A stretch of 64,000 bases of DNA from assembly GCA_964035545.1 (NCBI GenBank), contig OZ037770.1, positions 9,492,973-9,556,972 on the forward strand. The letters run 5' to 3'. Below the pieces are notes generated by a model. It worked only from the letters and a program-made list of their open reading frames with translations, did no database searches and was not told the origin of the DNA. Each line of letters opens with the position of its first letter. The stretch's first letter is position 1. The DNA comes from Bugula neritina. Its lineage: Eukaryota; Animalia; Bryozoa. The position numbers and the translations under genes were made by a program. This document shows, one piece after another, positions 150 through 47,100 of the stretch.

Positions 150-568
150 CTTGTAGCAATCAGCACTATCAGGTCCTTTACATCCACCAGAACAAGTAGG
201 AGAACAGCATTCTGCAGATCCAGACCCATAACAACCATTACTACAGCTAGCATGGCATTGTACTGGTAGTTTCTGGCAATAAATATCTAGTTGTGGTCCC
301 CAACAATTGCCATTACATGCTGCTGCGCAGTTATCTAAAAAATAGACACCACCCCTATACAGAAGCTTGTATTGTATTACTGAGGAACAAACAATTTTAA
401 TTTAATGTATTACTGGCTATAACACTATTGGTCTGCTTACTGTAAAGTTACCTATTGCATATTTTTAACCAAATTTGGTCAATATTTTTTAGTTATTATG
501 AATATTTGAAACTCAATCAAGTTGTTGCGTATTTTAATGTAATATGTTATTGTTTGAACAAAACAATA

Positions 569-611
<43 letters not shown>

Positions 612-3600
612 ATATATACATACTATATAGCTTTATTCACTAGAATATTTACTAATAACTGTTAGTTGTGTTAGCACTTACTGCTGCATGACTGAGGACT
701 AAGGGCATTTGCAGATTGCGTTGAAGAGTTTCCTAATAGTTGGTTCAAGTCAAGTGTGTTTGCTATGCAGCTGGCAGAGTTTATATATATATTTCCTTTT
801 TCTACAGCTATATAATATCATGTGCACAAGGCATGAGAAACAGAATGTAAACTGGTTACAGAGATAGTTCCATAATTTAAAGTACTTTTTCTTGGTTGTA
901 AAATGGTATGGAACTTGTTTAGAACCAAGTAATCTAAAAGCAAAATATTGTAGTGAGGACGTAATACGCGCGTCCCCCGCATTCCTTCAGCCTATCCAAG
1001 TGCGTCACGTGATAGGCCTTAGTTAGTAGTAGTTTTGCAGTAGAGAGAGCGTGCTAACTAAGCGAAGATCTAATCTCTAATCTGTGTACGTGCTGTATCT
1101 TTTATATAATTAGTAGTAAATAAACTTGGAAGCTTTTACCTAAATACTTTATTGGTGTAGATAAATAGACATAATTACCAGCTAGGAACCCACGCATAGT
1201 AGTTACATAAATTACTACAGTGGTGGCAGCAGTGGGATTTCTAGCTACTGTATGAGAACAATGAGAAGTATTAGAACATCATGGACGAGGGAGTAACTTC
1301 AATAGAAGGAGGTGAGCAGAACATTATTATAGGCCCTCTCGGAGCTGGAGAGGAGGTATATAGGAACATGTTGGAGGTTCCCATATTCACAGGCTGCAAG
1401 GATATTGAACAATTCGTTCAAGAATTCCGTGAAACTGCCGCCATTGCAAGATGGCCGCCAAGAGTAACCCTTACAAAACTGCGGATGGCACTGACGGGAG
1501 AAGCCAAGCCGTACGGGTGGAAGCCTAGCATAAACGGGTTCATTGCTACACTACGGGCTCGTTTTGGCATGCCCGTTGCCGTCGCCAAGTCCAGACTGCG
1601 AGGATTACTCCGCAAGACATGTACACCGCTTTCTGACCACGCCACTCTGGTGCAGAGACTGGCACGGACCGCGTATAGCGATCTGCCAGAAACACACAGA
1701 CGGCACTACACATTCGAAGCCTTTGTACAGTCTCTCAATTCCTTGGACTTCCACCACCAGTTACAAGCCAAGGGAGTGACCACAACTGAGGCTGCAATCC
1801 AAGAGAACAAGGCCTACGCTGGAGCCGAACGACTCTATAAGACGGAGGAGGCCACACCCCAGCCCTCTAGGGAACCAGACCATCCGGTCCGCATAGCTGC
1901 CGCGACCACTAAAACCCTCATAGAGACGGAGATAAGCCGCTTGATGACTAGACTGGGAAAATTGGTGGCGACGATAACATACAACCACTCAAGGAAGAGT
2001 AAGAGGACGGCAGCAAAACCCCCCAGACCCATGATGCGACGCTGGGAAAGCGGCAATCAGGGACACCGCCACCTGAGTGGCCCACGATTCAAACGGCAGC
2101 AGAAACCACAACCTCCCCGGAGACCCCCAGAGCTCCGCGGACACACACAGAGAGAAAAACGGGGTGGGTGTCGCCAGGAGCCCGTACGGGCCCAGCGACA
2201 CAAACCCCGTCAATGGCAAACACCTCGCCGTACCAGCCAACCAGGTCGACCACGAGACCCCTTCTCTCTGCCTCTCACCAACCGCTTCAGTCCGTTACCA
2301 GTAATGGAACAGACCAGCGAGGCCCCTCAGGGCATCGGGGAGGATCAGAACACCTCCCCGCAAGGAAACTCTCACCGGCCCCGCAAACCGCGGAACAAAC
2401 GGGCACCCTAGCTGACGGGTCACGGATTCCTTTCTACGGTATCATAGAATTGGCTGGGCGCGTCCGCGACCAAGCCATTCAGGAAACCTTCGTCATCAGC
2501 CCACTGGAGGAAGATGCCATACTAGGGATGCCGTTCTTGAAGAGACACGGGTGCCATATCGACTTTAGCAAGTCAGCCATGCTAATGGGCGGCAAAGAGC
2601 TCACCTGTGTCGACAAGTTCGGTCGTCCTCTAGCGGGAGGTGTGCAGGTAGTACGCAACTGTACTATACCCGGCCGCTCCCGGGCTACCGTTCACTGCAG
2701 AGTGAACAATAGCTAACTCTCGGGGCTAGGGGTTGTCGAAGGTGCGCACTCTAGAATCCAACTCGCCAGCAGTCTTAACCGGCTGACTGACCGAGGAGAG
2801 ATCTTGGTGCAGTGTGTCAACCCCTTCTCCGAAGCGGTACAATAACCGTCAGGATCCATGCTGGGTCGCTTCCACTCCATCCAGGAGGGGGATGTAGGGC
2901 CGTCGCTGGGAGCTGCGACGGAAGGTCCCCAACAGAGCCCGTCAGTTAGGCGGGGGACCGTCCCATCACACGTCAAAGAGCTATACCAGGCAGCGTGTAA
3001 CGGCTGCACGGGCAACGTGGAACGCCAGATTATGGCTCAGTTGCTACGTGATTATAGCGACGTGTTCAGCAGTGGGGACCATGACGTCGGCCTGACCACG
3101 GCCGTCTGTCATGAGATACCGCTGGCTGCAGAGACTACCCCTATTCGGCAGCCCACCAGGAGGCTGGGACCCGAGAAGGAAAAGGAGGTAAGCCAACAAG
3201 TTCGGGATCTTTTGGACCGCGGCCTCATCGAGCCAGCGCATAGCGCGTGGAGTTCACCGGTCGTTCTGGTCCGAAAGAAAGACGGCAGTTGGCGGTTCTG
3301 TGTGGATTATCGCAAGCTCAATAGCGTGACAATACAGGACGCCTACCCCTTACCCAGGATCGACGAATCTCTGGACGCCTTAGCCGGCAGCAAGTACTTC
3401 AGTACGCTAGACTTGTTGAGCGGCTATTGGCAGGTCCCCCTCAGCCCAGACGCCCAGGAGAAGGCGGCGTTCATCACGCGGGATGGCTTATGGAAGTGGA
3501 AAGTCCTCCCCTTCGGACTGACTTCCGCCCCCGCCACGTTCCAGCGGCTCATGGAACAGGTCCTCAGTGGACTCCACTGGAAGACACTGCTAGTGTACCT

Positions 3601-6600
3601 CGACGACGTCATCGTGATCTCCCCAGACTTTCAGACGCACGTCAGCCGTCTGCGGGAGGTCTTCGATCGACTCCGAGGCGCCAATCTGAAGCTCAAACCC
3701 TCCAAGTGCGCTCTCTTGCAGCCAGAGGTGAAGTACCTGGGGCACATCGTCGGCCGCCACGGCGTGGCGACGGATCCTGAAAAGGTACGAGCTATAGAAG
3801 ATTGGGTAACCCCCCCAGGATTTGACCGGGCTACGGGCTTTCCTGGGGCTGGTAGGGTATTACAGGCAATACATACCAGACTTTGCGGGGGTAGCGCAGC
3901 CGCTAAACCGGCTCACCGCAAAGGGGGTGACCTGGCAGTGGACTCCGTCGAACAGAGAGCGTTCGACTGCCTCAAAGGCCGCCTGCTGGAGGCCCCTATC
4001 CTGGCCTATCCAGACCCTGCCCTGGAGTACATCCTCGATACTGACGCCAGTGACCAAAATGTCGGCGCTGTGCTGTCCCAGGTGCAGGAGGGCCGCGAAG
4101 TAGTCGTGGCCTACTACAGTAAGTCTCTCTCGCCCACTGAACGAAATTACTGCACTACCCGAAAGGAATTGCTGGCAGTAATCAAGTCGGTGAAGCATTT
4201 CAGACCTTATCTATACGGCAGGAAGTTCCGCTTGCGGACCGACCACGCCTCCTTGATTTGGTTATGTAAGAGAGCAGAACCGTCCAGCCAAGTCGCCCGA
4301 TGGCTCGAGGTCCTGGCCGAGTTCTCTTACCGGATCGAACACCGACCCGGTAAGAAACACGGCAATGCTGATGGACTGAGCCGGCGACCGGACGAGGGGT
4401 GTAAACAGTGCCTCAACATCGAGAAGAGGGACGGAGGTCCTCCAAAATCCAAGTTGAGAGCACTGAACCACTCTGAAACGGAGTATGACTGGGACCAGGG
4501 TCAACTCCTACAGAAGGCCTCTACGCCCCCGGAGGCTATCCAACGCCTCCGTGCCAATCCTGTCTTGGCTGATAACGTTAGAGAGCTACGAAGACTCCAG
4601 GAGGACCTCCCTGGAGTGGTAGCCGACGTATATCGTGCCAAAAAGGAGGGGCGACGACCCAGTGAAGAACAACTGCGGCAGGGATGCACCGAGTTACGGT
4701 TGTACTGCCAACGTTGGGATTCCCTGCGGATCGGGCCAGATGGTCTGCTGACCATCACAGTGGCTGCTCACAACAACCAATACGGCAGACAAAGGGTGAT
4801 CTGCCCAGCCGCCATACGCCGGGAGTTAGTATGGGACACCCACAAGCAAGCCTACGCCGGGGTGAGCAGGGTTCTCTCCAAGTTACAACTCCGGTGGTAC
4901 TGGCCAGGCATGGAGCGTGAGGTGCGGCGTAGAGTCAAACAATGCGAAATCTGCCAGGCCAGCAAGCATGGCCGTCTCCCTGGTGAAGCGGGACGGCGTC
5001 GGCTATATGCTGGAAGGCCATGGCAGGTGGTAGCTATCGACCTAGTCGGACCCATGCCCGTCACCCCCAGGGGAAACAGTTGGATCCTAGTATTAACCGA
5101 CCACTTTACACGGTGGGCGGATGCCCTGGCTATTCCAGATGCGTCCGCCCCCACGGTGGCCAGGGTGCTGGACCAAAATGTATTCTGCTATCTTGGACTA
5201 CCTGAGCAAATACATTCGGACCAGGGGGCTCAATTCCAGTCCCAACTGTTGAGCGACCTCTGCCGCCTCTGGGGAGTAAACCAAAGCAGGACCACCCCAT
5301 ACCATCCTCAGGGCAACGGGGTGGTGGAACGCAACAATCGCATGTTGGGCGATGCACTGCGCAGCCTGCTCCTCGGCCGGGGTCAGGAGGAGTGGGATAC
5401 GGTACTACCGCAAGTCATGCGGGCCTACCGTAGTACACCACACACCAGTACGGAGGAAACCCCTAACCTCCTGATGCTCGGTTGAGAGACGCGAGTGCCT
5501 GACCACCTCACATACCACATCCCAGAGCAGGACTATACCATCCACGAGTATGCCAGTAAATTGATAGAGGACCTGAGGGCCGCACACGAAATACTGCGGG
5601 CGAAGCAGTGGCAGGTACGGCGAGAGGACTCTCAGGAACCACCCCTCTATCGAACTGGGGACTGGGTGTGGATGATCAACTACCGTAGGCGTCGAGGACA
5701 AGCGGCTAAGCTCCAGCCTAAGTTTGTGGGACCCTACGTAGTAGTTGAGGCTATGCCCAATCATACGTACAAGTTGGAGCGATCTGGACAGGTCTCTGTT
5801 CAGAACGAAGCCCGCTTGAAATCGTATTGGGCTAGCCCAGGAGCAGCAGGAGCAGCCCCCCCGTTGTTGGAGCCCAGGAGGCAGACAGTAACGCGTGGGC
5901 GGCAACGGCATGGACCAGAATACGAAGTGGTTGTGCCGCGGGGAGAGGACTTAGTGAGGCAGGAGACGCCACTCCCACCAACGGAAGTGCGCCCACCGCC
6001 CCCAGTACCAAGTCTACCCCCACCACTTCCGGTTCCGCATCCGCGTCCGGAAGTGCAAAACCCCCCCGTGGGAGGGGCTCCATCTGGGGACAACAGCAGA
6101 GAGGGGAACACCACCACCAACGGCGGGCCAGAAACACCACAGGTGGAGCAAAATAGCCCACCAGTGAGTACGCCGCCCCAACCAACAGCTATAACTCCCT
6201 CTCCAGCTGATGCGTCACCTCCCCTGGAACGGGGACAGCGTACTAGACAACCCCCAGCATACCTTAAAGATTTCATATGTGACCGTGTTACAAACGGCAG
6301 TTATGAAAGTCTAGCTGGGCGCCGTACGGAAAGACTGGCAACAAAGCGTGGGAGTTGTGAACACCACGGAAATCTCAACTTTTGCGAAGGCGGAGTAGTA
6401 AACAAAACTACTACGCCCGAGGCAAATAGTTCCAGCCGTGCGCAACAACCACGCTGCCCAGTCTTTTCGTCCGCTGACGTTGTCAAGGGAAGACGCATTC
6501 AAACTCAATCCACGGACATCCAAGCTTGAACGCTGAGTATGATTACAAATACCGGGTTCTCAGGTAAGCTTGCTCTGAGCTAACATTTCCACTCATGGAA

Positions 6601-9600
6601 ACCAGTCTACCATCAGTCAGTTCTGATTTAATCGCCTTGATTGAATCACAACTACTGGGGACTGAGTCCTACGTGAAAGGCGACGAGAACATAAAGATGG
6701 CCGACGATCTACTAGATCTGGAGCTTGACACTATGTCTCTCTGTCAGTCTACACGACACGACTCAGTCCCTCGAGTGCTATCTGAAAAGATGTATGACTC
6801 CCAGACTAGTAACAGTCGGTTGTCATCAGAATTATGGTGTAAAGATCATATCCGATCTAACAGTAATTCTGCTCTTTTAGATACCGCTCTCTCTCCTCTA
6901 TCTGGTGACATGCCGTCACTAGAAATGGCTTGGAACGAGGAACCCGTTCCCACTACTCTTCCGGAGGCACTCCTACAACAATCATGCTGGGTTACAACAG
7001 ATACGGAAACACTGATACGAGAGCACAAAGGAGACGACCAATGCACCACCTGCCGTTTATGCCAGCTTCACTTCACTACCCCACGAAGACTCCGAGTTCA
7101 TATTCCCCAACATTACTTCACCACCTTTTGTCCCTGTGGTGAATATAGTTACCACAGGGACTACATCCTCCGTCACCAACGAACCATGGGATGCCATATT
7201 GGACACCTATTCGAAGTCGACGAACCCTCCTTTCCACAATTCCTTAATCTCATCCGACCGTTCATATCAGACCCAGTTCGATATGAACGGCTGCGTCAGG
7301 AGTTCCCCGCACCCAGGACCATCACACAGGGACCCTGCCCTAAACCACCCGGATATAGGAAACCACGCATATCCCATTCCTCACCCCCCGCACGCACAGT
7401 GCCTCGCCCCGACTCTATACCAAGAGTCGTGTTACGACGCATCGATATACCACAGCGATGGCGTCCCTCCCCCCCTGTCTCCCCAAGGCTGTCTCGTAAG
7501 CGGCGTTGGCCATCTTCATCCCCCAATCGACACTCTGCTCCCGCCAGGAATCTAGGCGAGGCAGAAGAGCGGATACGAGAATTAGAGAAAGAGGTGCAAA
7601 GACTGACACCGAGAATCTCCGCCGCCGCATCAGAACTCCGGGCCCTCTCTGCCTCTGTAGCCCGAATGAAAGGAAGTGCTTGAAGGTGATGTCCCTCCTT
7701 TCCTATCCGTGATGGTACAGCAGGTGGTGCCCCATTACAGACCCTTCTCACGCTAGTGCTCACAGACAATTACTCAGTGTAACAATATAGTAACCTACCA
7801 GTATACAGCTCTACCTCTACAAACTATTCCCTTATAGTGCCTCCCGCCGGTGCCATTGTACATTCACTGTTATATTTTTTATATATGTATATGTTTCTTA
7901 CTACTGTACATAGCCATGTTTTTCTTTGTGTGCCACACGCTCTCTCAGTTTTTATATATATATAGTTTTATAACATTTTATGTTCGAATTATCTAATCTG
8001 TGTTATCAGAAAGTAGGGCTTTCTGCTGGAGGGGGCGATGTAGTGAGGACGTAATACGCGCGTCCCCCGCATTCCTTCAGCCTATCCAAGTGCGTCACGT
8101 GATAGGCCTTAGTTAGTAGTAGTTTTGCAGTAGAGAGAGCGTGCTAACTAAGCGAAGATGTAATCTCTAATCTGTGTACGTGCTGTATCTTTTATATAAC
8201 TAGTAGTAAATAAACTTGGAAGCTTTTACCTAAATACTTTATTGGTGTAGATAAATAGACATAATTACCAGCTAGGAACCCACGCATAGTAGTTACATAA
8301 ATTACTACAATATTATAGTTGTATAGGTTTGTACATATTGGTTTTAAAAGGACAAAGTCAATAAGGAAAATTACTAAAGAAGTTTAATGCACACTGCAGA
8401 TAATGATGTCTAAGCACATTTTGAGCAAAGGTGAAAAATACTCAAAATAAAGCAATGACTTTGGTGACATGACTTAGTCTAAACTGTTTATTGCCATCCA
8501 AAATCTCTCTCAAATAAGTTACAAGTTATAATATTTATTCTAAATATCTAATAATATACATCTGAATAGATTTTCTTTGAAATTTTGTCTTTTATATGTT
8601 ATATTTAAGCTTTAGGTTTTTTCAAAACTACTTGACTATTATCAACTGCAGCAGTGGTCATCAGCAATAACATTTTAAATTAAAATGCATATTGTATCTG
8701 TCCATAAGTTATCATAGAATTGTAATTAGTGTATATAGTCTTCAAATACAAATGAGTTGATTTACTTTATAATGTGACATTCATCCGTCTATAAATTGCA
8801 TTATTTTTTTTTCATTGTGTATCTGAAAAACTTTTGCCTGAAAAAATTTTAACTACATTTGAAACATAAATAAATTGAAATTACATATGATGACAGCTTA
8901 AGATTTTTATGTAACTAATCAAAATATTTCAATGTGTCGATTTATAATACAATCAACGATAAATGATTAGATAACCTATACTATAACTAGCTAATTTCTG
9001 TAGTTATTTAACATTTTTGGACACAGCGTTTTAATTAGTTTTGATACAAGTAAGGCACTGAAAAATAAACCACATTGCAAATTTTTTGCTTACTTTTAGG
9101 TAAAATATTTTTTGCAATAAAAAAGTGCTAGTGTGCCTGCAGTATGTGTATTTCAACAATTAGAAACAAAATCACAACTTTGAACCAAGAACAGTGTATA
9201 CATCTTATAATTACTAGCGTTTTTGTTAAGTATTTTATGATGAATTTTTTCATTTAATCCTACTTTATCATAACTTACTTTCCAAAGACTGCAAGTCGAA
9301 AAATGTTCTTCCAACATCTCGAAGTGTTAAACTATTACTAGACTTTTTGGGAACATATAAACCTTCTCCTCCAATTGATTTTAAATTGTCTAGGAATGTT
9401 TGTTTATTTTCATATCCTAGATGACCTAAAAAAATATGAGAATATACAACTAAAAATTAAAGACAAAGTTTTTTTATTGTGCAAAGTCTAACTATTTTTG
9501 AGAAGCTCTTGATAATATAAACATGTAGAAATTAAAGCAAAAATTCTTAGTTTTACTTTGCAGTAGCATTGCTTGACATTACTTAAAATAGCATATGCTA

Positions 9601-12387
9601 CTTTAAATGTTGGCTATTTACTGGCAGAAGTGGAACTAAAGGCTCTTTTAATAATAAAAAAGGCACATGCCAGTAATTGCGATAATGTGGCCTGTAAAAT
9701 TGTCACCACCTCTGGAGTTCATAACTGAAACCTCCGGCTTGCAAGCAGGTGCGCTAACCCCTATTTCTCAGAAACAGGGGTTTGAGCCTAATGACTGTTT
9801 TTTCTATAGGTTCTTTAGATATCTACAGAATGCATTATTAACAGTAAATCAAATGTTTGAAAAGTATATTTTCTAACATAAAGAAGAGCAGCTAAACAGG
9901 TGCTTGTGGTGCCCATAACTTTTCCTCTAGTTGTTTGCAGTTGCTTTAATAATTAATTTTAATTTATTTATAAGTTTTGTGCATTACTAAACATTGCTTA
10001 TATATCTATTATTCCTATCACCACATTTTGTTTAACTCCATTAACTTATGCGTCCTGTTCAAATCAAAGCATTCTTCGATATTGTTTTTAGAAGGTTTTA
10101 ACTATGTGTAGTTTTATCATTTTCTTACATCAGAGAGCAATATTTATGCTCTAAGAGCTTACAATCATTTAATCTTGTTGATATTATTTGCTTTCCAATT
10201 ATAATAGGTTTTGTTTTAATTGACTCATTCCCATATGTGATGCTTTTGCATTATTTACAATTATACTGTCTTAGAAACTTAAAGTGCAGTGTTGAGTTTA
10301 CCCAGTTGTCTCAATGTTGTAAAGATTAGCACTTTTGCTTGCAAACCAAAAGTCTCAAGTTTGAATTCCAGTAGGAGCAAAGGTTTTTTTTCGTAAGCTA
10401 TTTTGGCCTTTAGTGATATGTAGTAGTAAAACTCCGAGGGAGTCAAAAGATCAGGAAGCCTGATGACTAAAGGAGTAGTAGAGAGGCCAAGGAGGTTCTG
10501 AGAACTGGGTTGGATGTATAATGATGGGTTTACCCAGTTGTTCTGGTAATGTAATGGTTAGAAAATTTGCTTGCTTAAGCCATAGGTGCGAACCTCAGTG
10601 GGGGCAAAGTTTTTTTGTGTAAGGAGTTTCTTGAGTGTTCTATTGTTGCAAGTTTTAAAGGCCTTTAATTGTGACAGCTTTAGGTCAGCCTAGTATTGCA
10701 TTCAAACTAAAGTTTGGCTAAGAATATTAGTTTGTGCATGGGACTTAAATTTTGTTTTAGTGTATAACATTTATTTACCAATCTAGACTAGACTTCTCTT
10801 AGCAATGTATTAGCTGGTTATAAGCCCTCTTTTCAACTCCTTGTTGGATAATATAACTGAACAACTAACTTCATAGATGCAAAGTATTACTATACTATTA
10901 TGACCTAACCATAACTGCTTGCCAATGGTTTTTTTTTCTGCTATTATCTCAAATTAGTCAGCTGAGTTTAAGTATGAAATGACTGGTTTTTTTACTACAG
11001 GAAATGGCAAATTTGCTAGTACAGCCTTTTAATTAAACTATTGAAAAACAGCTAAGGTGTCTTTTTGGTATTTTTTTAATTTTATCCAAGCAAAGTGGGT
11101 CTTAAGCAGACTGCAGCCGCAAGCCTTTTTTCCTACCGATCTTAAACTCACTGATTTGCATATCATGTAATGCTTTGCAGGTAATGACTTCCAAATTATA
11201 CTAGTTTGTTCGTGGAGATGCTTTGGTTCAAACAACAGAAAAGCTTTATTTTGTATGCCATGTTGGTCTATACTCTTGTTTACAAGAAATCATAAAATAG
11301 CGGGTAGCAGTAGCAAAATTTATAGACCTTCTTGACTTAATGACACAAAAGGGCCGGAAAGGTTGACATCCTGACCATAAGCTACACTTTCTTTTACACA
11401 AATGAGACTAGGCTATAACGACAATAAATTCACTTTTCATTAGCCATGTTTTGTAATAAATTCAATTTATATAATAACACTATTAGACCGAAGCAGAAAT
11501 TCTTATTAATTTCTGATTTTTTATATTTATCTATATATTCCCATTGCCAGCTTTAATTTTGGAATAACTCATTTATTTTAGCCAGTTTTTTCATATTAGA
11601 ATGATCTTTTACAAAGTCACAATTTGCAAGGGTAGCTCATATTACTATTTGACAATTACAACAGTGTAGCTTTTACTTTCTAAGAAAGTAGCGATGATGC
11701 AGGATTTGAAACATCACTGAGAAAAACTGCAAACAAATTGGTAAATTGCTAAAATGAAATTGAAGAAATGAGAAAAGTAATAAAAATCATACCATGGCCT
11801 GAGGTAGCTCTGAGTGTTATTTGACCTTGAACTCTGACAATGTTAGACAATTGTTGTACGCTATTTTGCGCATTACTGGTTGAAAATATTTTTATGCCAA
11901 GGTACAGATCTCCAAGGACAAAAGAGCAGCCTTGGTAAACATTTCTCAGATAGTGTACTTCTGGTAGGATACTGCCAGGATATTGTCTTGTATCTTTCTC
12001 GTGCTGTCCACTGCAAACTCTTTGATAAATATCTACAGTATAAAGAAATAGGAAAAAGGAAATGGCTTACATAAGTTAAAACTGGGATCGCTACACGCAC
12101 ACTCGTGCACACACACGCACACATTTACAGTAAATATATATTTCATTTTCAACAATGTCTGGAAATACTGTACAGTTTACTAAATAATGCTGACACAATG
12201 AATGTTTGTCATTGAAAATAGGAATATTCAAAAATAAATAAAAAAACGATTTATCTTTGCAATCATATCACTCATATGATTCAATAATGCAAGCTCAACA
12301 GTTAAATTTACCTCGCAAACTGCCATGTAGAACTTTGGTGATAAAACTCAGAAAGAATAAACTCACTACAACTGTTTTATAGGTCAT
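150..12387 (-). CDS. Gene A: 5' part (exons 1-5: signal peptide, L1, start of CR1) of a close paralog of gene B; continues beyond the window start
   Basis: Minus-strand exons 12387-12312, 12032-11793, 9416-9279, 807-682, 334-150 have the same lengths (76, 240, 138, 126, 185) and splice sites as gene B exons 1-5 and are open. Confidence 0.85.
572..620. repeat. (TA)n microsatellite
   Basis: Visible dinucleotide run. Confidence 0.95.
949..1219 (+). repeat. 5' LTR of Gypsy 1
   Basis: Direct repeat of 8039-8309, TG..CA termini. Confidence 0.97.
1221..1238 (+). promoter_or_regulatory. Primer-binding site, tRNA-Leu type
   Basis: TGGTGGCAGCAGTGGGAT, complementary (1 mismatch) to the 3' end ATCCCACCGCTGCCACCA of eukaryotic tRNA-Leu. 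Confidence 0.8.
1281..2411 (+). CDS. gag: Gypsy 1 Gag-like ORF (degenerate)
   Basis: P.F.G..D.EQF..EF......WP motif shared with the gag ORFs at 19620, 28557 and 56535; zinc knuckle decayed. Confidence 0.8.
   Translation: MDEGVTSIEGGEQNIIIGPLGAGEEVYRNMLEVPIFTGCKDIEQFVQEFRETAAIARWPPRVTLTKLRMALTGEAKPYGWKPSINGFIATLRARFGMPVAVAKSRLRGLLRKTCTPLSDHATLVQRLARTAYSDLPETHRRHYTFEAFVQSLNSLDFHHQLQAKGVTTTEAAIQENKAYAGAERLYKTEEATPQPSREPDHPVRIAAATTKTLIETEISRLMTRLGKLVATITYNHSRKSKRTAAKPPRPMMRRWESGNQGHRHLSGPRFKRQQKPQPPRRPPELRGHTQREKRGGCRQEPVRAQRHKPRQWQTPRRTSQPGRPRDPFSLPLTNRFSPLPVMEQTSEAPQGIGEDQNTSPQGNSHRPRKPRNKRAP
2400..6529 (+). pseudogene. pol: Gypsy 1 pol (protease remnant, RT, RNase H, integrase), disrupted
   Basis: WRFCVDYRKLN, YLDD, DTDAS, TDH, integrase HHCC region and D..D..E, GPY. 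Stops at 2716, about 2845 and 5485; compensating frameshifts near 3815 and 3947; protease active site deleted. Confidence 0.93.
6595..7683 (+). CDS. Extra ORF inside Gypsy 1 (env position): C2H2-type zinc-finger protein with Pro/Arg-rich region and C-terminal coiled coil
   Basis: Intact 362-aa ORF; CRLC..F..P..L..HIPQH and CPCG.Y......L.HQRTMGCH; EAEERIRELEKEVQRL heptads; no signal peptide or TM segment. Confidence 0.75.
   Translation: METSLPSVSSDLIALIESQLLGTESYVKGDENIKMADDLLDLELDTMSLCQSTRHDSVPRVLSEKMYDSQTSNSRLSSELWCKDHIRSNSNSALLDTALSPLSGDMPSLEMAWNEEPVPTTLPEALLQQSCWVTTDTETLIREHKGDDQCTTCRLCQLHFTTPRRLRVHIPQHYFTTFCPCGEYSYHRDYILRHQRTMGCHIGHLFEVDEPSFPQFLNLIRPFISDPVRYERLRQEFPAPRTITQGPCPKPPGYRKPRISHSSPPARTVPRPDSIPRVVLRRIDIPQRWRPSPPVSPRLSRKRRWPSSSPNRHSAPARNLGEAEERIRELEKEVQRLTPRISAAASELRALSASVARMKGSA
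8039..8309 (+). repeat. 3' LTR of Gypsy 1
   Basis: Direct repeat of 949-1219, preceded by a polypurine tract. Confidence 0.97.
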
Positions 12388-25676: not shown

Positions 25677-25857
25677 AAGAAGAAGAAGTAATATTAAAGA
25701 GTCCTGCATGAAGTTAAAAAGTAAAAATAGAAGTTAAGAAGAAGTAATATTAAAGATTCCTGCATGAAGTTAAAAATAGAAGTTAAGAAGAAGAAGTAAT
25801 ATTAAAGAGTCCTGCATGAAGTTAAGAAGTTAAAAATAGAAGTTAAGAAAAAGAAGT
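25677..25857. repeat. Tandem repeat, about 3 x 53-60 bp purine-rich unit, in the 3' region of Gypsy 2
   Basis: aagaagaagtaatattaaagagtcctgcatgaagttaaaaa...gaagtt repeated. Confidence 0.85.
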
Positions 25858-29991: not shown

Positions 29992-29992
29992 G

Positions 29993-37244: not shown

Positions 37245-40200
37245 ATGACCTATAAAACAGTTGTAGTGAGTTTATTCTTTCTGAGCTTTATCACCAAAGT
37301 TCTACATGGCAGTTTGCGAGGTAAATTTAACTGTTGAGCTTACATTATTGAGTCATATGATTGCAAAAATAAACCGTTTTTATTTATTTTTGAATATTCC
37401 TATTTTCAATGACAAGCATTATTTAGTAAACTGTACAGTATTTCCAGACATTGTTGAAAATGAAATATATATATACTGTAAATGTGTGCGTGTAGCGGTC
37501 CCAGTTTTAACTTATGTAAGCCATTTCCTTTTTCCTGTTTCCTATTTCTTTATATTGTATAGATATTTATCAAAGAGTTTGCAGTGGACAGCACGAGAAA
37601 GATACAAGACAATATCCTGGCAGTGCCCTACCAGAAGTACACTATCTGAGAAATGTTTACCAAGGCTGCTATTTTGTCCTTGGAGATCTGTACCTTGGCA
37701 AAAAAATATTTTCAATTGGTAGTTTCCCAAATGTTGTATATCAAATGACTAACATTGTCAGAGTTCAAGGCCAAGTAACAATCAGAGCTACCTCAGGCAC
37801 CGGTATGATTTTAATCACTTTTCTCATTTCTTCAATTTCATTTTAGCAATTTACTAATTTTTTTGCAGTTTTTCCCAGTGATGTTTTAAATCCTGCATCA
37901 TGGCTACTTTCTTAAAAAATAAAATCTACTCTGTTGTAATTCAAATAGTAATATGAGCTACCTTTGCAAATTGGGACTTAGTAAAAGACCAGTTTAATAT
38001 GAAAAAACTGGCTAAAATAATTGAATTATTCCAAAATTAAAGCTGTAGGCAATGGGAATATATTATAGAGAAATATAAAAAATAAGAAATTTATAAGAAT
38101 TTCTGCTTCAGTCTAATAGTGTTATTTTATAAATTGAATTTTTTACAAAACATGGCTAATGACAAGCAAATTTATTGTCATTATAGCCTAGTCTCATTTG
38201 TGTAAAAAAAAGTGTAGCACATAGCTTATGGTTAGGATGCCAGCCTTTTTGGCACTTTTGCGGCAAGTCAAAAACGTCTATAAATTTTGCTACTTCTACC
38301 CACTATTTTATGATTTCTTGTAAATGAAAGTATAGACCAACATGGCATACAAAATAAAGCTTTTCTGTTGTTTGAACCAAAGCATCTCCACAAACAAACT
38401 AGTGTAATTTGGAAGTCATTACCTGCAAAGCATTACATGATATGCAAATCAGTGAGTTTGAGATTAATGGTAGGAAAAAAGGCTTGCAACTGCAGCTTGT
38501 TTAAGACCTACTTTGCATAGATAAAATTAAAAAAAATTGCCAGAAAGACATCTTAGCTTTTTTCCAATAGCTTAACTAAAAGGCTGTACTAGCAGACTTG
38601 CCATGTCATATAGTAAAAAAAACCAGTCACCTGATACTTAAACTCAGCTGACTAATTTGGGATAACAGCAGAAAAAAACCATTGGCAAGCAGTCATGGTT
38701 ACGTCATAAGAGTATATAGTAATACTTTGCATCTATGAAGTTAGTTGTTCACTTATATTATCCAACAAGGAGTTGAAAAGAGGGCTTATAACCAGCTAAT
38801 ACATTGCTAAGAGAAGTTTATAGTCTGTAATGGTAAATAGATGTTATACACTGAAATGTAATTTTTAAGTCCCATAAACTAATATTCTTAGCCAAACTTT
38901 AGTTTGAATGCAATACTATAGGCTCACCTAAATCTGTCACAATTAAAGGCCTTTAAAACTTGCAACATAATTTTTGCTTTAATTTATACATGTTTAAATT
39001 ATCAAGAGCTTCTTAAAAATAGTTAGACTTTGCACAATAAAAAAACTTTGTCTTCAATTTTTATTCGTTGCAGTAAAGGTCTGACAGCTTAGTTTTATAT
39101 TTTCATATTTCTAGGATATGAAAATAAACATACATTCCTAAATAATCTAAAATCAATTGGAGGAGAAGGTTTATATGTTCCCAAAAAGTCTAGTAATGGT
39201 TTAACACTTCGAGATGTTGGAAGAACATTTTTCGACTTGCAGTCTTTGGAAAGTAAGTTATGATAAAGCGGGATTAAATAAACAAAGTCATCATAAAATA
39301 TTTAACAAAAACACTCGTTATAATTATAAGATGTATACTGTTCTTGGTTCAAAGTTTTGATTTTGTTTCTAATTGTTGAAATACACATACTGCAGGCACA
39401 CTGGTTACTTGCACATGTACAGTATAGCACTTTTTTATTGTGAAAAATATTATACCTAAAAGTAAACAAAAAATATGCGATGTGGTTTATTTTTCAGTGT
39501 TTTACTTGTATCAAAACTAATTAAAACGCTGTCACCAAAAATGTTAAATAACTAAGGAAATCAGCTAGTTATAGTAGGTTATCTAATCTTTTATTGTTAA
39601 TTATATTATTATAAATTGACACATTGAAATATTTTGATTAGTTACATAAAAATCTTGAGCTGTCATCATATGTAATTTTAATTTATTTATGTTTCAAATG
39701 TAGTTAAAATTTGTTCAGGCAAAAGTTTTTCAGATACACTATGAAAAAAAAATAATAAAATTTATAGACAGATGAATGTCACATTAAATTAAATCAACTC
39801 ATTTTTATGTAAAGACTATACATTAATTATTACTCTATGCTAACTTTTCGACAGATATAATATGCATTTTGATTTAAAATGTTATTGCTGATGACCACCA
39901 CTGCATTTGATAATAGTCAAATAGTTTTGAAAAACACCTGAAATTTTGAACATAACATATATAAGAAACAAAATTTCAAACAAGATTTATTCAGATGTAT
40001 ATTATTAAATATTTAGAATAAATAATTAATTTATAACTTATTTTAGAGAGATTTTGGATGGCAATAAGCAGTTTAGACTAAGTCATGTCACCAAAGTCAT
40101 TGCTTCATTTTGAGTATTTTTCACCTTTGCTCAAAATGTGCTCAGTCATCATTATCTGCAGTGTGCATTACAGTTCTTTGGTAATTTTACTTATTGACTT

Positions 40201-40566
40201 TGTCCTTTTAAAACCAATATGTACAAACTTATACAACTATAAATTTTTCTTTTAGATTAATTGGTTCTAAACAAGTTCCATACCATTTTAAAACCAAGAA
40301 AAAGTACTTTAAATTATGAAACTATCTCTGTAACCAGTTTACATTCTGTTTCTCATGCCTCATGCATATGATATTATATAGCTGTAGAAAAAGGAAATAT
40401 ATATATAAACTCTGCCAGCTGCATAGCAAACACACTTGACTTGAACCAACTATTAGCAAACTCTTCAACGCAATCTGCAAATGCCCAAAGTCCTCAGTCA
40501 TGCAGCAGTAAGTGCTAACACAACTAACAGTTATTAGTAAATATTTTAGTGAATAAAGCTATATAG

Positions 40567-40645
<79 letters not shown>

Positions 40646-41059
40646 TATATTATATATATATATATATATACCTCAATCTGTGGACAGCCGCTGTTTTGTG
40701 GTTTGTCCCCTCATCAGCACAGAACAGAGTACCATGGCCCACACCTTCGAAATAGTAGAAACTTATGTTTCTACTAAAGCATATTTAAAAGGTGTGTAAA
40801 CTCAAGCCAGAGAGCTCAAGTGACTCTAGGGGTCACCTGTAGGAGTCACGAGCCTTGCAAAATGCTAGCAGCTTGAGTTTGTGACCATAGTGAGAGAGCT
40901 CAATCACTGAATGTCATTGCTGAGCATTAAGTGAGAGCATAATACCTCAATCTGTGAACAGCAGCTGTTTCAGGGTTTGTCCCCTCATCAGCACAAAACA
41001 GAGTACACACACACACACACGCGCACGCGCACGCACACGCACACGCACACACACACATA

Positions 41060-41109
<50 letters not shown>

Positions 41110-44100
41110 TTGTTCAAACAATAACATATTACATTAAAATACTCCAAAAGTTGATTGAGTTTCAAATATTTACAATTAAAAAAATACTGACTAAATTTGG
41201 TTAAATATATGCAATAGGTAACTTTACAGTAAGCAGACCAACAGTGTTATAGCCAGTAAGTAGTAATACATTAAATTAAAATTGTTTGTTCCTCAGTAAT
41301 GCAATACAGGCTTCTGTATAGGGGTGGTGTCCGATTTTTAGATAACTGCGTAGCAGCATGTAATGGCAATTGTTGGGGACCACAACTAGATATTTATTGC
41401 CAGAAACTACCAGTACAATGCCATGCTAGCTGTAGTAATGGTTGTTATGGGTCTGGATCTGCAGAATGCTGTTCTTCTTATTGTAATGGTGGATGTAAAG
41501 GACCTAATGGTGCTAGTTGCTACAAGGTCAGTGGCTGAAACTAATAAATGACAGTAAAAAGTACATAATTTAATGCAACATAGTAATTGCTTTTTATAGA
41601 AAAAGTATTGTATGTGTTATACATGGTCTATTAAAAGGAGCTTGCTATAAATATATTATATTATATCTTATTACATTATATGTTATAAATTTATATTATA
41701 TCATATTGCAATAATTATATTATGACAAATTATATTATATAATATTGTATATTATATAATGTTATAATATATCATAATAAATAATATAACTTAGTATACA
41801 ATATAACATATATTATAAGAATAATGTAATGCAGTATAATACAATGTATAGTTATATAATATTATACTATAAAATATTTTACTGTACAACATTATATTAT
41901 ACTATATTATATTATAATGTACTATATTATATTGTATATAGCAATATTTTGCATTATATTATACTATAATAAAATTATAATATAATGTATTATATACTAT
42001 ATTGTATAACTTTTTTTTATTATATATTATACTATATTACAATGTAATAAATTGTTACAAGAAAAGCATTTTAAATAATGATCAAAGACAAGGATATTTC
42101 AATTGTGTAAACATCACCTCATGAGCTGCAGTTAATATAGAAATCAGCTAGCTATTTTAGTGATGTATAGATCATCACTGTAGCTGTAGTATCACAATAT
42201 GATAATAATATATTCAATCAAGACTATATTTAGTTCATGCGTGTTGTATTCCAATAGAGATGTATATTTATAAAGTCTGAATGAAAAGTGAATGCATAAC
42301 AGAAAGTGCTAGGTTTATAATAGTTTAAAATATTAACTTTTTACCGTAGCCAGAATGGCCGGGTATAAGTAATTAACACAATAGAGAAAAGCATAATGTA
42401 GGCAACATGGCTACAAAAATACTATTATAATAAAGCTGTAGTGATTCAACATATTATGCTTTCCATGGTCTTATACAATGTTCTAACAGCTAAGTCACTA
42501 GTGTGCATGGTAAATCAGTATAAAATTAAGATGTGTTATCTATAAACAATATATTGTGTGGATGTAAAATTGATAGGATATTTAATCAATTTTGGTTAGC
42601 CTAAAAAAACTCATGCAAGTTTATAGTCACTATCACTGTGAAAAACTCTTGATGTAAATGTTTTTTGTTAAACTGAGCTAAAAACTCACTTAAATGAGGC
42701 ACAAGAGCAATTATGACAGGATGTTCTTTTTAATATTATCAATGGCCTTTGTTTTTTTACTGCGAAAATCCTAGACCACGGCTTATACACCTATTGTGCT
42801 TAAGTCTACAGAAGAGTGTTTTTGCTCTTTGAAAAATGAATTGCAATAAAAACTGTTGCTTACTTTTGTATCATTGTTTCTAGTATGAAGGGTGCCCTGC
42901 ATACTCTGATGTTAATGGTAGATGTGTTTCCGACTGCAGCTCATCTCAAACTTCTACCAAATATATTCTTTACAAGAAGTTCTGTGTCTCACAATGTCCA
43001 GGTATGCTCCATAGTTTATGTGATTCTATCTAAACTACTATAATAGGTACATTCATAGTTTTACATCAATATATTATGTAATTGCCTCGTGCAACATAAT
43101 ATTATATTATATTATGTTAAATTATATTATATATTATCATTTTGTGATATTATAGTATAATAATTTAGGATGTGTAGTAGCATATTATATTGTGCAATGT
43201 TATATCATAATAAATAATATTATATACTAGTATTGTAGTATATTTAACATTATTTTATTTTAAACTATATTATATTCTAATAAATTATATTATAATATAA
43301 TATTAGATATAATATTGTGAAATAATTGCCACCACTGGGAATCAAGCCCGAGTCCTCTGGCTTGCAAGCAAGTGTGCTACCATTACACCACGGAGCCTAC
43401 TGGGAAACACAACACTACAAATATGATATTATTTTATATTAAATTATAATATATAATACTATATATAATACAATCTTTTTTTATAGCATAATGTATTATA
43501 TCATATTATAATACTATTCTACATTATAATGTATTATCTTATATTATAATATATTAAATTACAATATGTGATTGTTTGAAATAATCGCAGCTGTTCTGTT
43601 CCATGACTGAATTCTTGTTGTAGCCTCAAGTAGAGGACTAAACTACCCTGGTACTACTATTGGAAATAGCTCTTTCTCAGAGAGTAGCTTTCATTCTGAA
43701 AGATGGTGGACAGTTACGTATCCAAGAACTTTTCTTTTTCACTCAGCTATTCTAGTGACTCGGTTTTCCAATAATCAGTCATGCCTAAGTCAAGCATGTC
43801 TAGGTATACCTACCCAGGCGGTCTATAAACTCTCATCACTTCCTATGACTAATTAGCATTATCACATTGCTTCTAAATCATGATTGGGTAAATTTGAAAA
43901 AACTGACAAATTAGAAATTAATTAAATGTTTTCAAATTTTTTTAGCTAATGCTGGGATGAGAGACATGTATTTCTTGACTGACGGTACAAAATGGATCAG
44001 CCCCTCTGCCTCCATTCCAAATACAAATTCTCTCTATTGGCAGTTGTGCAACTACAAAGCCAGAATGATAAATGAAAAATACTTTTTAAGATGTATTTTT

Positions 44101-47100
44101 GGTGAGAAAGAGAGATTAGTGTACAGGTTTGGAATGAGAGGGATCAGAATGAATAGACTACTTGTCTTTCAACAGATTCATATGAATGGAAACAGTAAGT
44201 GGCGGTTTATAAGCTTCAGTTGCTGCGGATAATAAAAAGCTTGGCACACAACTTTTGACATATTGATAAAAATGTCTTGATTTTTATTTGAGTGCTTAAA
44301 AGATAAAACGTTACAAATATAGCAGCTTATTTTGTGTAGTTTTGTAATGCAACTCCTACTATGAAATGCTTTGTTTTTTTAGCCAGATCAAAAGTACAAA
44401 TATCTTCATCTACAGTAAGTCTATTTCCACACCTATTAGATTCAGTCATCATTCCTCAACCACCTATTTCGTATGCTATGCAAAACAGATCACGTTGGTA
44501 TGGAGTTCACGTGGGAAGAGTGATAGAGTTCTCTCATGCAGTGGTATATACCAGACATGGTACAGACTGTCCTGGTGTCACAAACTGCTGTGAGTATCAT
44601 GTCTGTGCTGGTTTACAAGTTACTAAACTTACTTTACTTGTATTTTATGTGAAAACAGTTAAAAAATTGTTATTTGTTAGCCTAAAGTATTTATTGGAAA
44701 GCATTATAAAATATTAAGATTTATTTTATTGCTACAAACAGCTTTAGTCAAATCTCTAAGAGATGTGAGAAGAAAGTGGTGGATTGATTAAATCAGTATA
44801 ATCACACAGTAGGGCATAATTAAATATAATTTATTTCTAGATATTGAGGCAACTACTAAAGTTACAGAAAAAAGCAGCAGTTACAACTAAAAACAAATAG
44901 TATTGTAAATTTTTGTACATATAATGCACGACATCTTCAAATATATTTGCTAGTAATGCAAATGTATTGGCAAATTGTTGATTGCTACCTCAACAGTAAG
45001 CGATATTTGGTGTTACAGTGTAACATCAGTGTATCTGTTGCCTGCAAAAAACCCACAAAATAACTGTTCAATTTTTTCTTGTATAAAACTTTTTCCCTCA
45101 CCAGGATTCCAACTCAGAACCTTATTATAGGCCTGCTAGCAGGTGTGATACTGTTACATTACAAGGGTCATTGAATGAACTTTACATTACGTTTTGATTT
45201 CAGATGAATACTTCAATGGCACATTAGTGAGTATAGGACCATACTATATACCAAGCCATATTCCTAGCAGGCTACCAGTTAATACCTATAGCCCTCAATG
45301 GCAACAGTGTACTTACTTGAGTAAACCCACGTCAAGTCGATACCTAATTGCGGGATGTGACCGTTTGGCACCATATGTTCGCTACCCACACCTACGTCTG
45401 TTAATGTTTGTTAAAATTCAGAGTTCCCAAACTTTTCATCTCACAGAAGTTGAAATATACCAGTTTCAGAGACCTCAATGTGAGTAAACATAGCAACTAC
45501 CAATGGTTTTGTTAAATTATCCTTATCATTTTTGTGAGTTGTCTTCCCTCTTTCACTTCTTTTGTTTGTTCTATACTATACTTTATGTGAGCCAGTTTTT
45601 GGCTGAAGTTTAGTGGTTTTAGAGTTCAGGAGGCACGATTTGCCCAAATATCGGACAATTTCGACAACGGAACTCCGACATTCATCCAAATTTCAGCCGA
45701 ATATCGAACCAACTTTCTGAAAAAATTTTTTGTTAGTATATAAGAGTCAGTCGATTACCAGCGCTTGCCCAAGACACACCAAGAGAAAAATAAAGAGACT
45801 ATTATTTCAAGTTTACAAAACACTTTTATTTGATCAACACTAATAAGCATGCAGATTGCTACATCTAAGTCCTAAATTTACCTAAAAATATTAGTGTACA
45901 GCAGCTCCAAACAAAAAATAGTAACCTATTGCTGAGACTAAAAAATAAAAATGGTATTGCTATTGGTGTTTTACTTCAGTTCCTTATTACAAGCTGGGTA
46001 ATGAGTGTGTAGAGAGCTGTCCAGATGGATTTCTACCAGATGAACAACTCAATTGTATACAATGTAATGGTGTGTGTGAGAAGTCATGTGACTTTGGTTC
46101 TACAGTATACAATGAACACAACTTTATGTCTCTTCCAAATGATTGCACATATATTTCTGGACATGTGATTCTCGACTTCAACAATTTCAATAGTATGTCT
46201 GAGTAAATTGTTATAATATTATACTTACTTGCATATGCATAACAGGATTGTATTATTATTATATTAGTATTATGATAATCTCACATTAGCAGCAACCACT
46301 TTGTTCAAAATTTTAATGACCCGCTTCAACTCTATTTAATTATTTCTCAATTATCATTTATCAATTAAAAATGTGTTTTGTGGAGAGAAAATTGCTATTC
46401 TACCAGTATACTGCATGGTATCAATTTCTTTTTGATAACTAACTAGCATTGTGTTAGTCTGCGTAGACTTTGAGTTTCTATGTAATAAACATTACAATAT
46501 ATTTTAGTTTAAACAACATACTTTTGCCAAAACCTAAATGAAATTAAGCTGCAGTATTTGTAATGATCTATTAAAAATGATTATGATGTATAAATTGTCA
46601 TAGCAATAATAATATCTATATACACGTACAGCTGCAATATTCATGAGATAACACCAAAAAATTGTAATAATAACACCAACCTTTATGTACATGTAGCTTG
46701 TACATCAAGTTCTTTGCAGTAACTTATTCTTGGTATTCAGTTTGCACTTTGAATTATTAATTTCTTTAAATGGTATTTTGATAGTCAAAAGAAGTTTATG
46801 AATTTAGCTTTGCTCTGCTTCTTATTTTTTCTTTTTTGCAAGTCCGAATATCTACTAAAATATAAATTTGAAAACAACTATTTATAGTTATAAGTATATG
46901 TAGAACTTTTTTTGCATTAAGGTGAGCTTAAAGTATAATGTCTTTGTGCTTTAAATTATAGCAACACACTGGAGAAATATAAGTCAAAGACTGTCTCATT
47001 CATTAAGCTCAATTAAAGTGATTTCAGGATCTCTGGTTATAAAGAGCAAATTCTCTCGTAACTCTGAATTTCTCACTGATCTCTCAATGCTACGGAACTT

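What the first reader, a model, noticed from the sequence alone, without database searches (positions are those of the whole stretch)
150..12387. Strong excess of amino-acid changes between the young paralogs A and B (positive-selection signature)
Manual codon comparison of exons 1-5 (255 codons): 27 codons differ non-synonymously and only 3 differ silently. Per exon (nonsyn/syn): 0/1 signal peptide, 15/1, 3/1, 2/0, 7/0. All Cys, frames and splice sites are kept. Neutral expectation is roughly 3:1. Inference: diversifying selection on the ectodomain, typical of recognition or arms-race proteins rather than a conserved growth-factor receptor.
Basis: partly seen in the sequence, partly recalled or inferred. 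Interest (0 to 1): 0.85.

Follow-up and report, generated by a model that had tools for sequence, protein, structure and literature searches.

The report
Fast-changing loops, not gene-wide positive selection
Two recently duplicated copies of an EGF-receptor-like surface protein do differ mostly by amino-acid changes at their tip, but standard tests find no region-wide positive selection; the excess comes from a few short hypervariable loops, one of which changed about eleven times faster than neutral DNA in one copy.

Summary
The "strong excess" does not hold up. Eleven of the 27 codons carry 2-3 base changes. Counted per substitution, Nd is 35.8 and Sd 8.2, dN 0.063, dS 0.050, omega 1.24 (Fisher p 0.71). 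ML omega is 1.15-1.5 (LRT p 0.33-0.72). dN does not exceed non-coding divergence (0.066-0.073).

I extended the model to 14 exons (866 codons), open in A, B and a third copy C that is 98-99% identical to B. Exons 6-14 are under purifying selection (omega 0.46, p 0.005), so these are working genes.

The signal sits in three short loops. The main one is a 12-codon loop in exon 2 (A 11845-11880, B 37715-37750). An outgroup contig shows that A kept the ancestral loop. The B/C lineage made 13 of 36 base changes there, against a 3.2% neutral rate on the same branch (P 4e-11). The same loop is the most variable segment in all seven family members. Exon-limited gene conversion keeps the silent sites of exon 5 uniform, which inflates omega there.

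Verdict: there is no ectodomain-wide positive selection. There is a local, lineage-specific burst, compatible with selection but not proven. The scan had already noted this receptor family elsewhere in the genome.

The parts
12312..12387 (-). Gene A exon 1 (start codon at 12387, signal peptide, 76 nt, phase 1)
   Evidence: GT donor. One silent difference from B.
11793..12032 (-). Gene A exon 2 (start of the receptor L1 domain)
   Evidence: Recep_L_domain, 13.8 bits. One search aligns it collinearly to ErbB2 domain I residues 3-63, E 0.036.
11845..11880 (-). Hypervariable loop HV1 in A (codons 77-88), which is the ancestral version
   Evidence: 15 of 36 nt differ from B. The outgroup contig L020 matches A at 34 of 36 positions. 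Contigs of run X1 confirm the A sequence.
9279..9416 (-). Gene A exon 3
682..807 (-). Gene A exon 4 (end of L1)
   Evidence: An acceptor 6 nt downstream is an equally in-frame alternative. A and B do not differ there.
150..334 (-). Gene A exon 5 (first modules of the furin-like Cys-rich domain). It holds variable loops HV2 (279-296) and HV3 (159-200).
   Evidence: Furin-like, 25.2 bits; ErbB4 164-222, E 1e-7; variation confined to two loops.
37245..41526 (+). Gene B exons 1-5 (37245-37320, 37563-37802, 39115-39252, 40382-40507, 41342-41526)
37715..37750 (+). HV1 in B, the derived version, identical in copy C
   Evidence: No other copy was found anywhere in the genome.
42884..48344 (+). Gene B exons 6-14 (42884-43001, 43624-43803, 43946-44194, 44383-44589, 45204-45479, 45980-46192, 46962-47175, 47725-47915, 48160-48344)
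   Evidence: All are GT-AG bounded, and 866 codons are open in A, B and C. A-B omega is 0.46.
949..8309 (+). LTR retroelement inside intron 3 of gene A, antisense to the gene, absent from B
   Evidence: 271-nt LTRs, 99.3% identical; RT, RNase H, integrase; TG..CA ends, ATAT duplicated on both sides.
9546..10643 (.). 1.1-kb insertion in intron 2 of A, absent from B and C
   Evidence: One X1 contig skips it.

Best explanation
A and B, together with a third copy C outside the window, are intact and constrained paralogues. They belong to a kinase-less, ErbB-ectodomain-like receptor family and arose by inverted duplication about 6.5-7% neutral divergence ago. Their N-terminal region does not carry a region-wide dN/dS > 1 signature. 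The 27:3 contrast looks strong only because codons with 2-3 changes are scored as single non-synonymous events. The real pattern is a mosaic. (1) A conserved scaffold is under purifying selection: exons 6-14, and exons 1-5 outside the loops, with no indels and all Cys and splice sites kept. (2) Exon-limited gene conversion among family members keeps even the silent sites of exon 5 uniform and so inflates omega there. (3) Three short hypervariable loops hold the changes. The main loop, HV1, covers 12 codons just after the residue that aligns with EGFR Tyr45 on the ligand-binding face of domain I. After the duplication the B/C lineage replaced 9 of those 12 residues, about 11 times the neutral rate, while A kept the ancestral loop. 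My preferred mechanism, which is inferred and which I put at about 50%, is a post-duplication shift of binding specificity driven by local positive selection on this loop. The main alternative, at about 30-35%, is one or a few complex mutational or micro-conversion events.
For: Non-coding divergence is 0.073 raw and 0.066 clean. Exons 6-14 have omega 0.46, p 0.005, and 866 codons are open with 26 splice sites kept in three copies. Exons 1-5 have 0 indels against 7.9 expected from the non-coding rate, P 4e-4. The patch holds 15 differences in a 36-nt window, against a maximum of 8 anywhere in 3.7 kb of non-coding DNA, permutation P < 5e-5. Exons 1-5 without the patch have pN 0.041, below the non-coding 0.073, p 0.006. 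Polarising with outgroup L020 gives non-coding unique changes A 37, B 39 and outgroup 71 of 1224, and patch unique changes A 1 and B 13 of 36, P 4e-11. On the B lineage, exon 2 has Nd 15.5 and Sd 1.5, with pN 0.088 against a neutral 0.032, p 0.0007. On the A lineage Nd is 4 and Sd 2. The same loop is the most variable stretch in all 7 exon-2 copies and in the independent young pair F-G. For gene conversion: B-D dS is 0.05 in exon 5 and 0.12 in exon 9, against 0.8-2.5 in the neighbouring exons, with DNA similarity ending at the exon borders. The ErbB relationship rests. The EGFR site-1 residues are from PMC8838133.
Against: No RNA run was available, so expression and the exon models are not confirmed experimentally. 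On the B lineage the N:S contrast alone is not significant (p 0.38), because there are few silent sites. The rate test assumes independent substitutions, yet multi-hit triplets are also twice as frequent as expected in non-coding DNA. The outgroup L020 covers only exons 1-2 and looks damaged itself: its start codon is not aligned and it has an 11-nt deletion at the exon-2 donor. The mapping of HV1 onto EGFR residues rests on a marginal alignment (E 0.036) and on my memory of the EGFR/ErbB2 alignment.
Confidence: 0.7

Rival explanations
1. One reading: diversifying (positive) selection acts on the ectodomain in general, giving a strong dN/dS > 1 signature between A and B.
For: The 27:3 codon count is correct. 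If the 44 differences were independent hits, P would be 0.003. Exon 5 shows Nd 10 against Sd 0. The young pair B-C shows 6 non-synonymous codons, 0 silent codons and one in-frame 3-nt deletion in exons 1-5.
Against: Omega is 1.15-1.5 and not significant. dN does not exceed intron divergence. Without the 12-codon patch, pN is significantly below neutral. Exons 6-14 have omega 0.46. The zero dS in exon 5 is explained by exon-limited conversion.
Confidence: 0.08
2. The loop burst is mutational and not selective. Either one or a few complex multinucleotide events occurred, or a short gene-conversion tract came from a paralogue or allele that is not in this assembly. Selection merely tolerated the result.
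For: 11 of 30 changed codons are multi-hit, and non-coding triplets also show twice the expected multi-hits. Multinucleotide mutations are mostly non-synonymous and mimic positive selection (bioRxiv 10.1101/165969). Exchange between paralogues is evident in this family. In the F-G pair the same loop is saturated at silent sites too, and the adjoining intron no longer aligns.
Against: No donor exists elsewhere in the 216-Mb assembly for either loop version. No 12-mer template was found in about 140 kb of surrounding and paralogous DNA. The 21 matching bases are in register, so this is not a frameshift pair. Silent sites of exon 2 on the B lineage are at the neutral rate, 0.031 against 0.032, which is not what a diverged donor would give. 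The same loop is hit in independent pairs.
Confidence: 0.3
3. One copy is a decaying pseudogene, and omega near 1 simply reflects a loss of constraint. A is the candidate, since it carries a 7.4-kb LTR element and a 1.1-kb insertion in its introns.
For: Omega for exons 1-5 is about 1. A has large intron insertions.
Against: 866 codons are open and all splice sites intact in A, B and C. Exons 6-14 have omega 0.46. Exons 1-5 have no indels, P 4e-4. With the outgroup, A is the conservative copy, with Nd 4 and Sd 2 in exon 2. The insertions are intronic, and the LTR element is antisense to the gene.
Confidence: 0.04

Closest known systems
ErbB/EGFR receptor ectodomain (domains I-II: receptor L domain plus furin-like Cys-rich domain)
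   Same: Exon 5 aligns to ErbB4 164-222, ErbB3 and EGFR 166-224, E 1e-7 to 1e-3. Exon 2 aligns collinearly to ErbB2 domain I 3-63. Exon-level Pfam hits to Recep_L_domain and Furin-like fall in the expected order.
   Different: No kinase domain is found in B's 3' reading frames. Exons 7-10, with no Pfam match, sit between the two halves of the furin-like region. The gene belongs to a multi-copy, fast-rearranging family rather than being a single conserved growth-factor receptor.
Multigene recognition-receptor families that combine gene conversion with hypervariable contact loops (textbook example: the MHC peptide-binding region; from general knowledge)
   Same: Scaffold exons are homogenised among otherwise diverged paralogues. 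Short loops stay different and change by replacements. Duplicates are young and often inverted.
   Different: No ligand, expression or polymorphism data exist here. dN/dS > 1 is not demonstrated. The loops cover only 6-14 codons.
False positive-selection signals caused by multinucleotide mutations (Venkat, Hahn and Thornton; bioRxiv 10.1101/165969)
   Same: The apparent excess depends on codons with 2-3 changes. Once the multiplicity is respected, significance disappears.
   Different: The main cluster spans 36 nt with 13-15 changes, far more than the 2-3 adjacent bases typical of such events. It also recurs at the same loop in other family members.

Membership tests
Genes with a pairwise positive-selection signature | dN/dS significantly above 1 over the region compared | tested here: not met
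   NG86 omega 1.24, p 0.71. ML omega 1.15-1.5, LRT p 0.33-0.72.
Genes with a pairwise positive-selection signature | dN above the neutral rate measured in introns and flanks | tested here: not met
   Region-wide dN is 0.063 against 0.066-0.073. The feature is met only locally: B-lineage exon 2 has pN 0.088 against 0.032, p 0.0007, and the loop has 13 of 36 changes, P 4e-11.
Genes with a pairwise positive-selection signature | Site-model test (M7 vs M8) across all paralogues | not tested
   I left this out on purpose. Exon-scale mosaicism (dS 0.05 to over 2 between the same two genes) violates the single-tree assumption, and recombination is known to inflate such tests (general knowledge).
ErbB/EGFR-type ectodomain | N-terminal receptor L domain | tested here: inconclusive
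   Exon-level hits only: 13.8 bits (exon 2) and 21.4 bits (exon 12), against a cut-off of 21.8. ErbB2 alignment E 0.036. The joined protein was not searched.
ErbB/EGFR-type ectodomain | Furin-like Cys-rich domain following L1 | tested here: met
   phmmer to ErbB4, ErbB3 and EGFR domain II, E 1e-7. Pfam 25.2 bits for a 61-aa fragment. Exon 11 matches the end of the same profile.
ErbB/EGFR receptor tyrosine kinases | Cytoplasmic tyrosine-kinase domain | tested here: not met
   The 239-aa terminal reading frame of B (51550-52266) and the other 3' frames give no kinase hit. Only B's frames were tested, exon by exon.
Paralogues homogenised by gene conversion | Some exons nearly identical at silent sites between genes whose other exons are saturated | tested here: met
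   B-D dS is 0.05 (exon 5) and 0.12 (exon 9), against 0.8-2.5 in exons 2-4, 7, 8 and 10. B-E exon 14 dS is 0.15. F-G exon 2 dS is 0.51, against 0.02-0.12 elsewhere.

The most novel reading that the evidence does not exclude
HV1, with the two smaller loops in the first Cys-rich modules, is the specificity-determining hypervariable region of a bryozoan-specific, kinase-less EGFR-derived recognition-receptor family. After each duplication the loop is rebuilt by positive selection, while gene conversion keeps the scaffold uniform. This would be an immune- or allorecognition-like mode of evolution on an EGFR fold.
Probability: 0.35. Interest if true: 0.7.

Novelty: new member of a known kind. Interest (0 to 1): 0.4.

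Why it matters
The result corrects an over-strong claim. Counting changed codons, rather than substitutions, made a near-neutral omega look like strong positive selection. It also shows where the real signal lies. One 12-codon loop on the presumed ligand-binding face of domain I was rebuilt in one daughter lineage after duplication, inside an otherwise constrained and conversion-homogenised gene. If the family proves to be a recognition system, this loop is the first place to look for specificity. It also warns that tree-based selection tests on this family will mislead unless recombination and multi-base changes are modelled.

Tried and rejected
RNA evidence: no RNA run holds the locus. The single DNA run X1 only confirmed the A sequence, including HV1, and showed B/C-derived contigs laid on A.

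Donor search: whole-genome DNA searches for both loop versions found only the copies themselves. A k-mer search of about 140 kb of local and paralogous DNA found no 12-mer template.

More outgroup sequence for exons 3-5: a metagenome scan with the exon-5 peptide and an exact-pattern scan both found nothing.

Test of whether B/C-unique exon variants come from D or E: 18 of 36 match. This is not clearly above chance, apart from a cluster at the 3' end of exon 14.

Literature: no paper on a Bugula EGFR-like family was found.

A frameshift pair as the cause of the patch was rejected because the matching bases are in register. An internal mini-intron in the patch was rejected because the only GT..AG pair spans 16 nt.

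The spliced (joined) protein model was not sent to any search or folding tool. Exons were searched one by one by reference. The joined coding sequence was built only inside scripts, from the window file, for codon counting. No structure prediction or mapping of the loops on a model was therefore done.

M7/M8 site models were not run, for the reason given in the membership test.
Full report
ANATOMY

A self-comparison shows that window 1-12987 matches 41671-36647 in reverse orientation. The match is interrupted in A by two insertions, at 949-8309 and 9546-10643. Gene A therefore runs on the minus strand, from its start codon at 12387 to exon 5 at 334-150, and continues beyond the window's left edge. 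Gene B runs on the plus strand from 37245. The two genes lie head to head.

Using reading frames, GT-AG sites and A/B conservation I obtained five exons per gene.

Exon by exon, the pieces give:
- a receptor L-domain hit for exon 2 and a furin-like hit for exon 5;
- an alignment of exon 5 to ErbB4 164-222, ErbB3 and EGFR domain II, E 1e-7 to 1e-3;
- a marginal but collinear alignment of exon 2 to the first 60 residues of ErbB2 domain I.

Earlier notes of this scan call the organism the bryozoan Bugula neritina and the gene a member of a kinase-less EGFR-lectin family. I did not check the species. B's 3' reading frames show no kinase domain.

THE OBSERVATION

The counts are exact: 27 non-synonymous and 3 silent codons, per exon 0/1, 15/1, 3/1, 2/0 and 7/0. 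No Cys is changed and all splice sites are kept.

The 30 changed codons hold 44 base differences: 19 single, 8 double and 3 triple. Partitioned by substitution (Nei-Gojobori), Nd is 35.8 and Sd 8.2 over 597 and 168 sites. That gives dN 0.063, dS 0.050 and omega 1.24, Fisher p 0.71. A pairwise codon-model fit gives omega 1.15 (F3x4) or 1.50 (F1x4), with likelihood-ratio p 0.72 and 0.33 against omega = 1.

With 44 independent neutral hits the expectation is 30.8:10.7 and P(at most 3 silent codons) is 0.003. With the observed 19/8/3 multiplicity kept, the expectation is 24.7:5.3 and P is 0.18. The apparent strength therefore rests entirely on treating multi-hit codons as single non-synonymous events. 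Multinucleotide changes are known to mimic positive selection (bioRxiv 10.1101/165969).

Non-coding A-B divergence is 0.073 (268 of 3688), or 0.066 when counted at least 10 nt from gaps. dN does not exceed either figure.

ARE THE GENES ALIVE?

A third copy, C, lies about 50 kb to the right of the window on the minus strand. It is 98-99% identical to B over 12 kb.

I extended the exon model to 14 exons, 866 codons. All 26 splice sites and the frame are intact in A, B and C. C has one in-frame 3-nt deletion.

For A-B, exons 6-14 give Nd 39, Sd 23 and omega 0.46, p 0.005. dS there is 0.060, close to the intron value. In exons 1-5 there are no indels, where the non-coding rate predicts 7.9 (P 4e-4). 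These are constrained genes, not pseudogenes.

dN in exons 1-5 is 2.3 times that of exons 6-14 (p 0.0007). The tip of the protein does evolve faster.

WHERE THE SIGNAL SITS

Fifteen of the 44 differences fall in one 36-nt stretch of exon 2, codons 77-88 (A 11845-11880, B 37715-37750). No 36-nt window in 3.7 kb of non-coding alignment holds more than 8 differences, and permutation gives P < 5e-5. Without this patch, exons 1-5 have omega 1.21 (not significant), and their pN of 0.041 is significantly below the non-coding rate (p 0.006).

In exon 5, all variation among A, B, C and the more distant paralogue D is confined to two loops. One lies between the Cys of the CWG motif and the next Cys (A 279-296). 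The other lies in the last 14 codons (A 159-200). The roughly 25 codons between them are identical at every base in A, B and C.

POLARITY

A search of protein-cluster representatives with exon 2 returned a 126-aa genomic reading frame. Its 2.1-kb contig (L020, from a JGI metagenome) aligns to both A and B at about 84%.

In clean non-coding columns the unique changes are A 37, B 39 and L020 71, out of 1224. L020 is therefore an outgroup, and the A and B branches are equal in length, at 3.0% and 3.2%. In the patch the unique changes are A 1 and B 13, out of 36. A kept the ancestral loop, and the B/C lineage rebuilt it at about 11 times the neutral rate of its own branch (P 4e-11, or 3e-9 after correction for all windows of the gene).

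Over exon 2 the lineages compare as follows:
- B lineage: Nd 15.5, Sd 1.5. Its pN of 0.088 exceeds the neutral 0.032 (p 0.0007). Its pS of 0.031 equals the neutral rate.
- A lineage: Nd 4, Sd 2.

The N:S contrast alone is not significant (p 0.38), because silent sites are few.

THE FAMILY CONTEXT

Seven exon-2 copies exist in the genome. In all of them the stretch after the conserved G-D/N-hydrophobic motif and before I-x-R-V-Q-G is the most variable part.

In the independent young pair F-G on another contig, exon 2 holds as many differences as the nine other aligned exons together. The same loop is saturated there (pN 0.49, pS 0.85), against pN 0.021 and pS 0.062 in the other exons, and the intron after it no longer aligns.

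Between B and D, dS is 0.8-2.5 in exons 2-4, 7, 8 and 10, but 0.05 in exon 5 and 0.12 in exon 9. The DNA similarity ends at the exon borders. This is exon-limited gene conversion. It explains the absence of silent differences in exon 5, and therefore its 10:0 ratio. It is also the reason I did not run tree-based site models.

B's similarity to A and C ends just after exon 14, at 48351. B-unique states at the end of that exon match paralogue E, which is a further sign of exchange.

MECHANISM

Shown:
- the scaffold is constrained;
- the scaffold is partly homogenised by gene conversion;
- change is concentrated in three loops;
- the main loop changed on one daughter lineage far faster than neutral DNA.

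Inferred: by the ErbB2 alignment, HV1 follows directly after the residue equivalent to EGFR Tyr45. Tyr45 is one of the four hydrophobic site-1 contacts for EGF in domain I (PMC8838133). The step from ErbB2 to EGFR numbering is from my memory. A change of binding specificity after duplication, driven by local positive selection, is therefore my preferred reading, at about 50%.

The main rival, at about 30%, is one or a few complex mutations, or a micro-conversion from a donor not present in this assembly. Neither loop version has any other copy in the 216-Mb assembly, and no 12-mer template lies nearby. The neutral silent rate on the B lineage also argues against import from a diverged donor. 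However, multi-hit triplets are twice as common as expected even in non-coding DNA, so substitutions are not fully independent.

LIMITS

- There is no RNA evidence.
- The exon models rest on frames, splice sites and three-copy conservation.
- The outgroup covers exons 1-2 only and appears damaged itself.
- The joined protein model was not sent to any search or folding tool, so exons were searched singly by reference and no structural mapping was done.
- The retroelement in A's intron was only described.

VERDICT

This is a normal pattern for a young, conversion-prone receptor family. It is of moderate interest because the family itself appears undescribed and the loop is a concrete candidate for its specificity determinant.

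Noticed in passing
window 949-8309 (+): A complete-looking Ty3/gypsy-type LTR retroelement (RT, RNase H, integrase) sits in intron 3 of gene A, antisense to the gene. It has long open frames of 376, 875 and 344 aa, plus an extra 362-aa 3' frame with no Pfam match. Its 271-nt LTRs are 99.3% identical, with TG..CA ends and ATAT duplicated on both sides. It is GC-rich (58%) in a 30% GC genome and much younger than the A/B duplication. I only described it.
   Followed up: partly
window 19152-26818, 28000-30160, 56112-62616: Further copies or fragments of related GC-rich LTR elements, 70-76% identical to the one in gene A. The copies at 19-27 kb and 56-63 kb are 92-98% identical to each other in the stretches compared.
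   Followed up: no
G000:C6:9594551-9608814 (minus strand; L010-L012): A third gene copy, C, is 98-99% identical to B over 12 kb and inverted relative to it. Its exons 1, 2 and 4 are identical to B's. All six B-C codon differences in exons 1-5 are non-synonymous, and there is one in-frame 3-nt deletion in loop HV2. In exons 6-14, silent-site divergence (17 of 401) is about three times my rough estimate of overall B-C divergence in that region, taken from bins that include exons. This hints at exon-limited import from other paralogues.
   Followed up: partly
window 48344-48360 and beyond: B's similarity to both A and C stops abruptly in the intron just after exon 14, while A and C continue to match each other. 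B's 3' part therefore has another origin. Its exon 14 is 92% identical in protein to that of paralogue E.
   Followed up: partly
G000:C6:9413694-9422845 (D, minus) and 9425897-9434914 (E, plus); G000:C2:31754273-31762744 (F, plus) and 31775709-31786304 (G, minus): Other family members also occur as inverted pairs (D/E head to head, F/G tail to tail) with the same exon structure. Identity to B varies from about 45% to 90% from exon to exon within one gene.
   Followed up: partly
window 9546-10643; window 40671-41006: Lineage-specific intron insertions. One, of 1.1 kb, is found only in A. One, of about 0.34 kb in a (TA)n tract, is found in B, and another note of the scan reads it as retrozyme-like. 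C carries a larger insertion (about 1.8 kb) at the same place.
   Followed up: no
L020 (JGI metagenome 3300003318, 2147 nt): Host-like DNA in a metagenome carries a relative of A/B, 84% identical, with the A-type loop. The start-codon region does not align, and an 11-nt deletion removes the exon-2 donor. It may be a damaged copy, or an allele from a sibling lineage.
   Followed up: partly
window 9200-12500, run X1: Contigs of the only public run that holds the locus differ from the assembly at about 0.5% of sites. One of these is a silent change at 11794 (codon 105 of A, CAT to CAC). Contigs that skip the A-only insertion have about twice the depth of A-specific contigs, as expected if they come from B plus C.
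   Followed up: no
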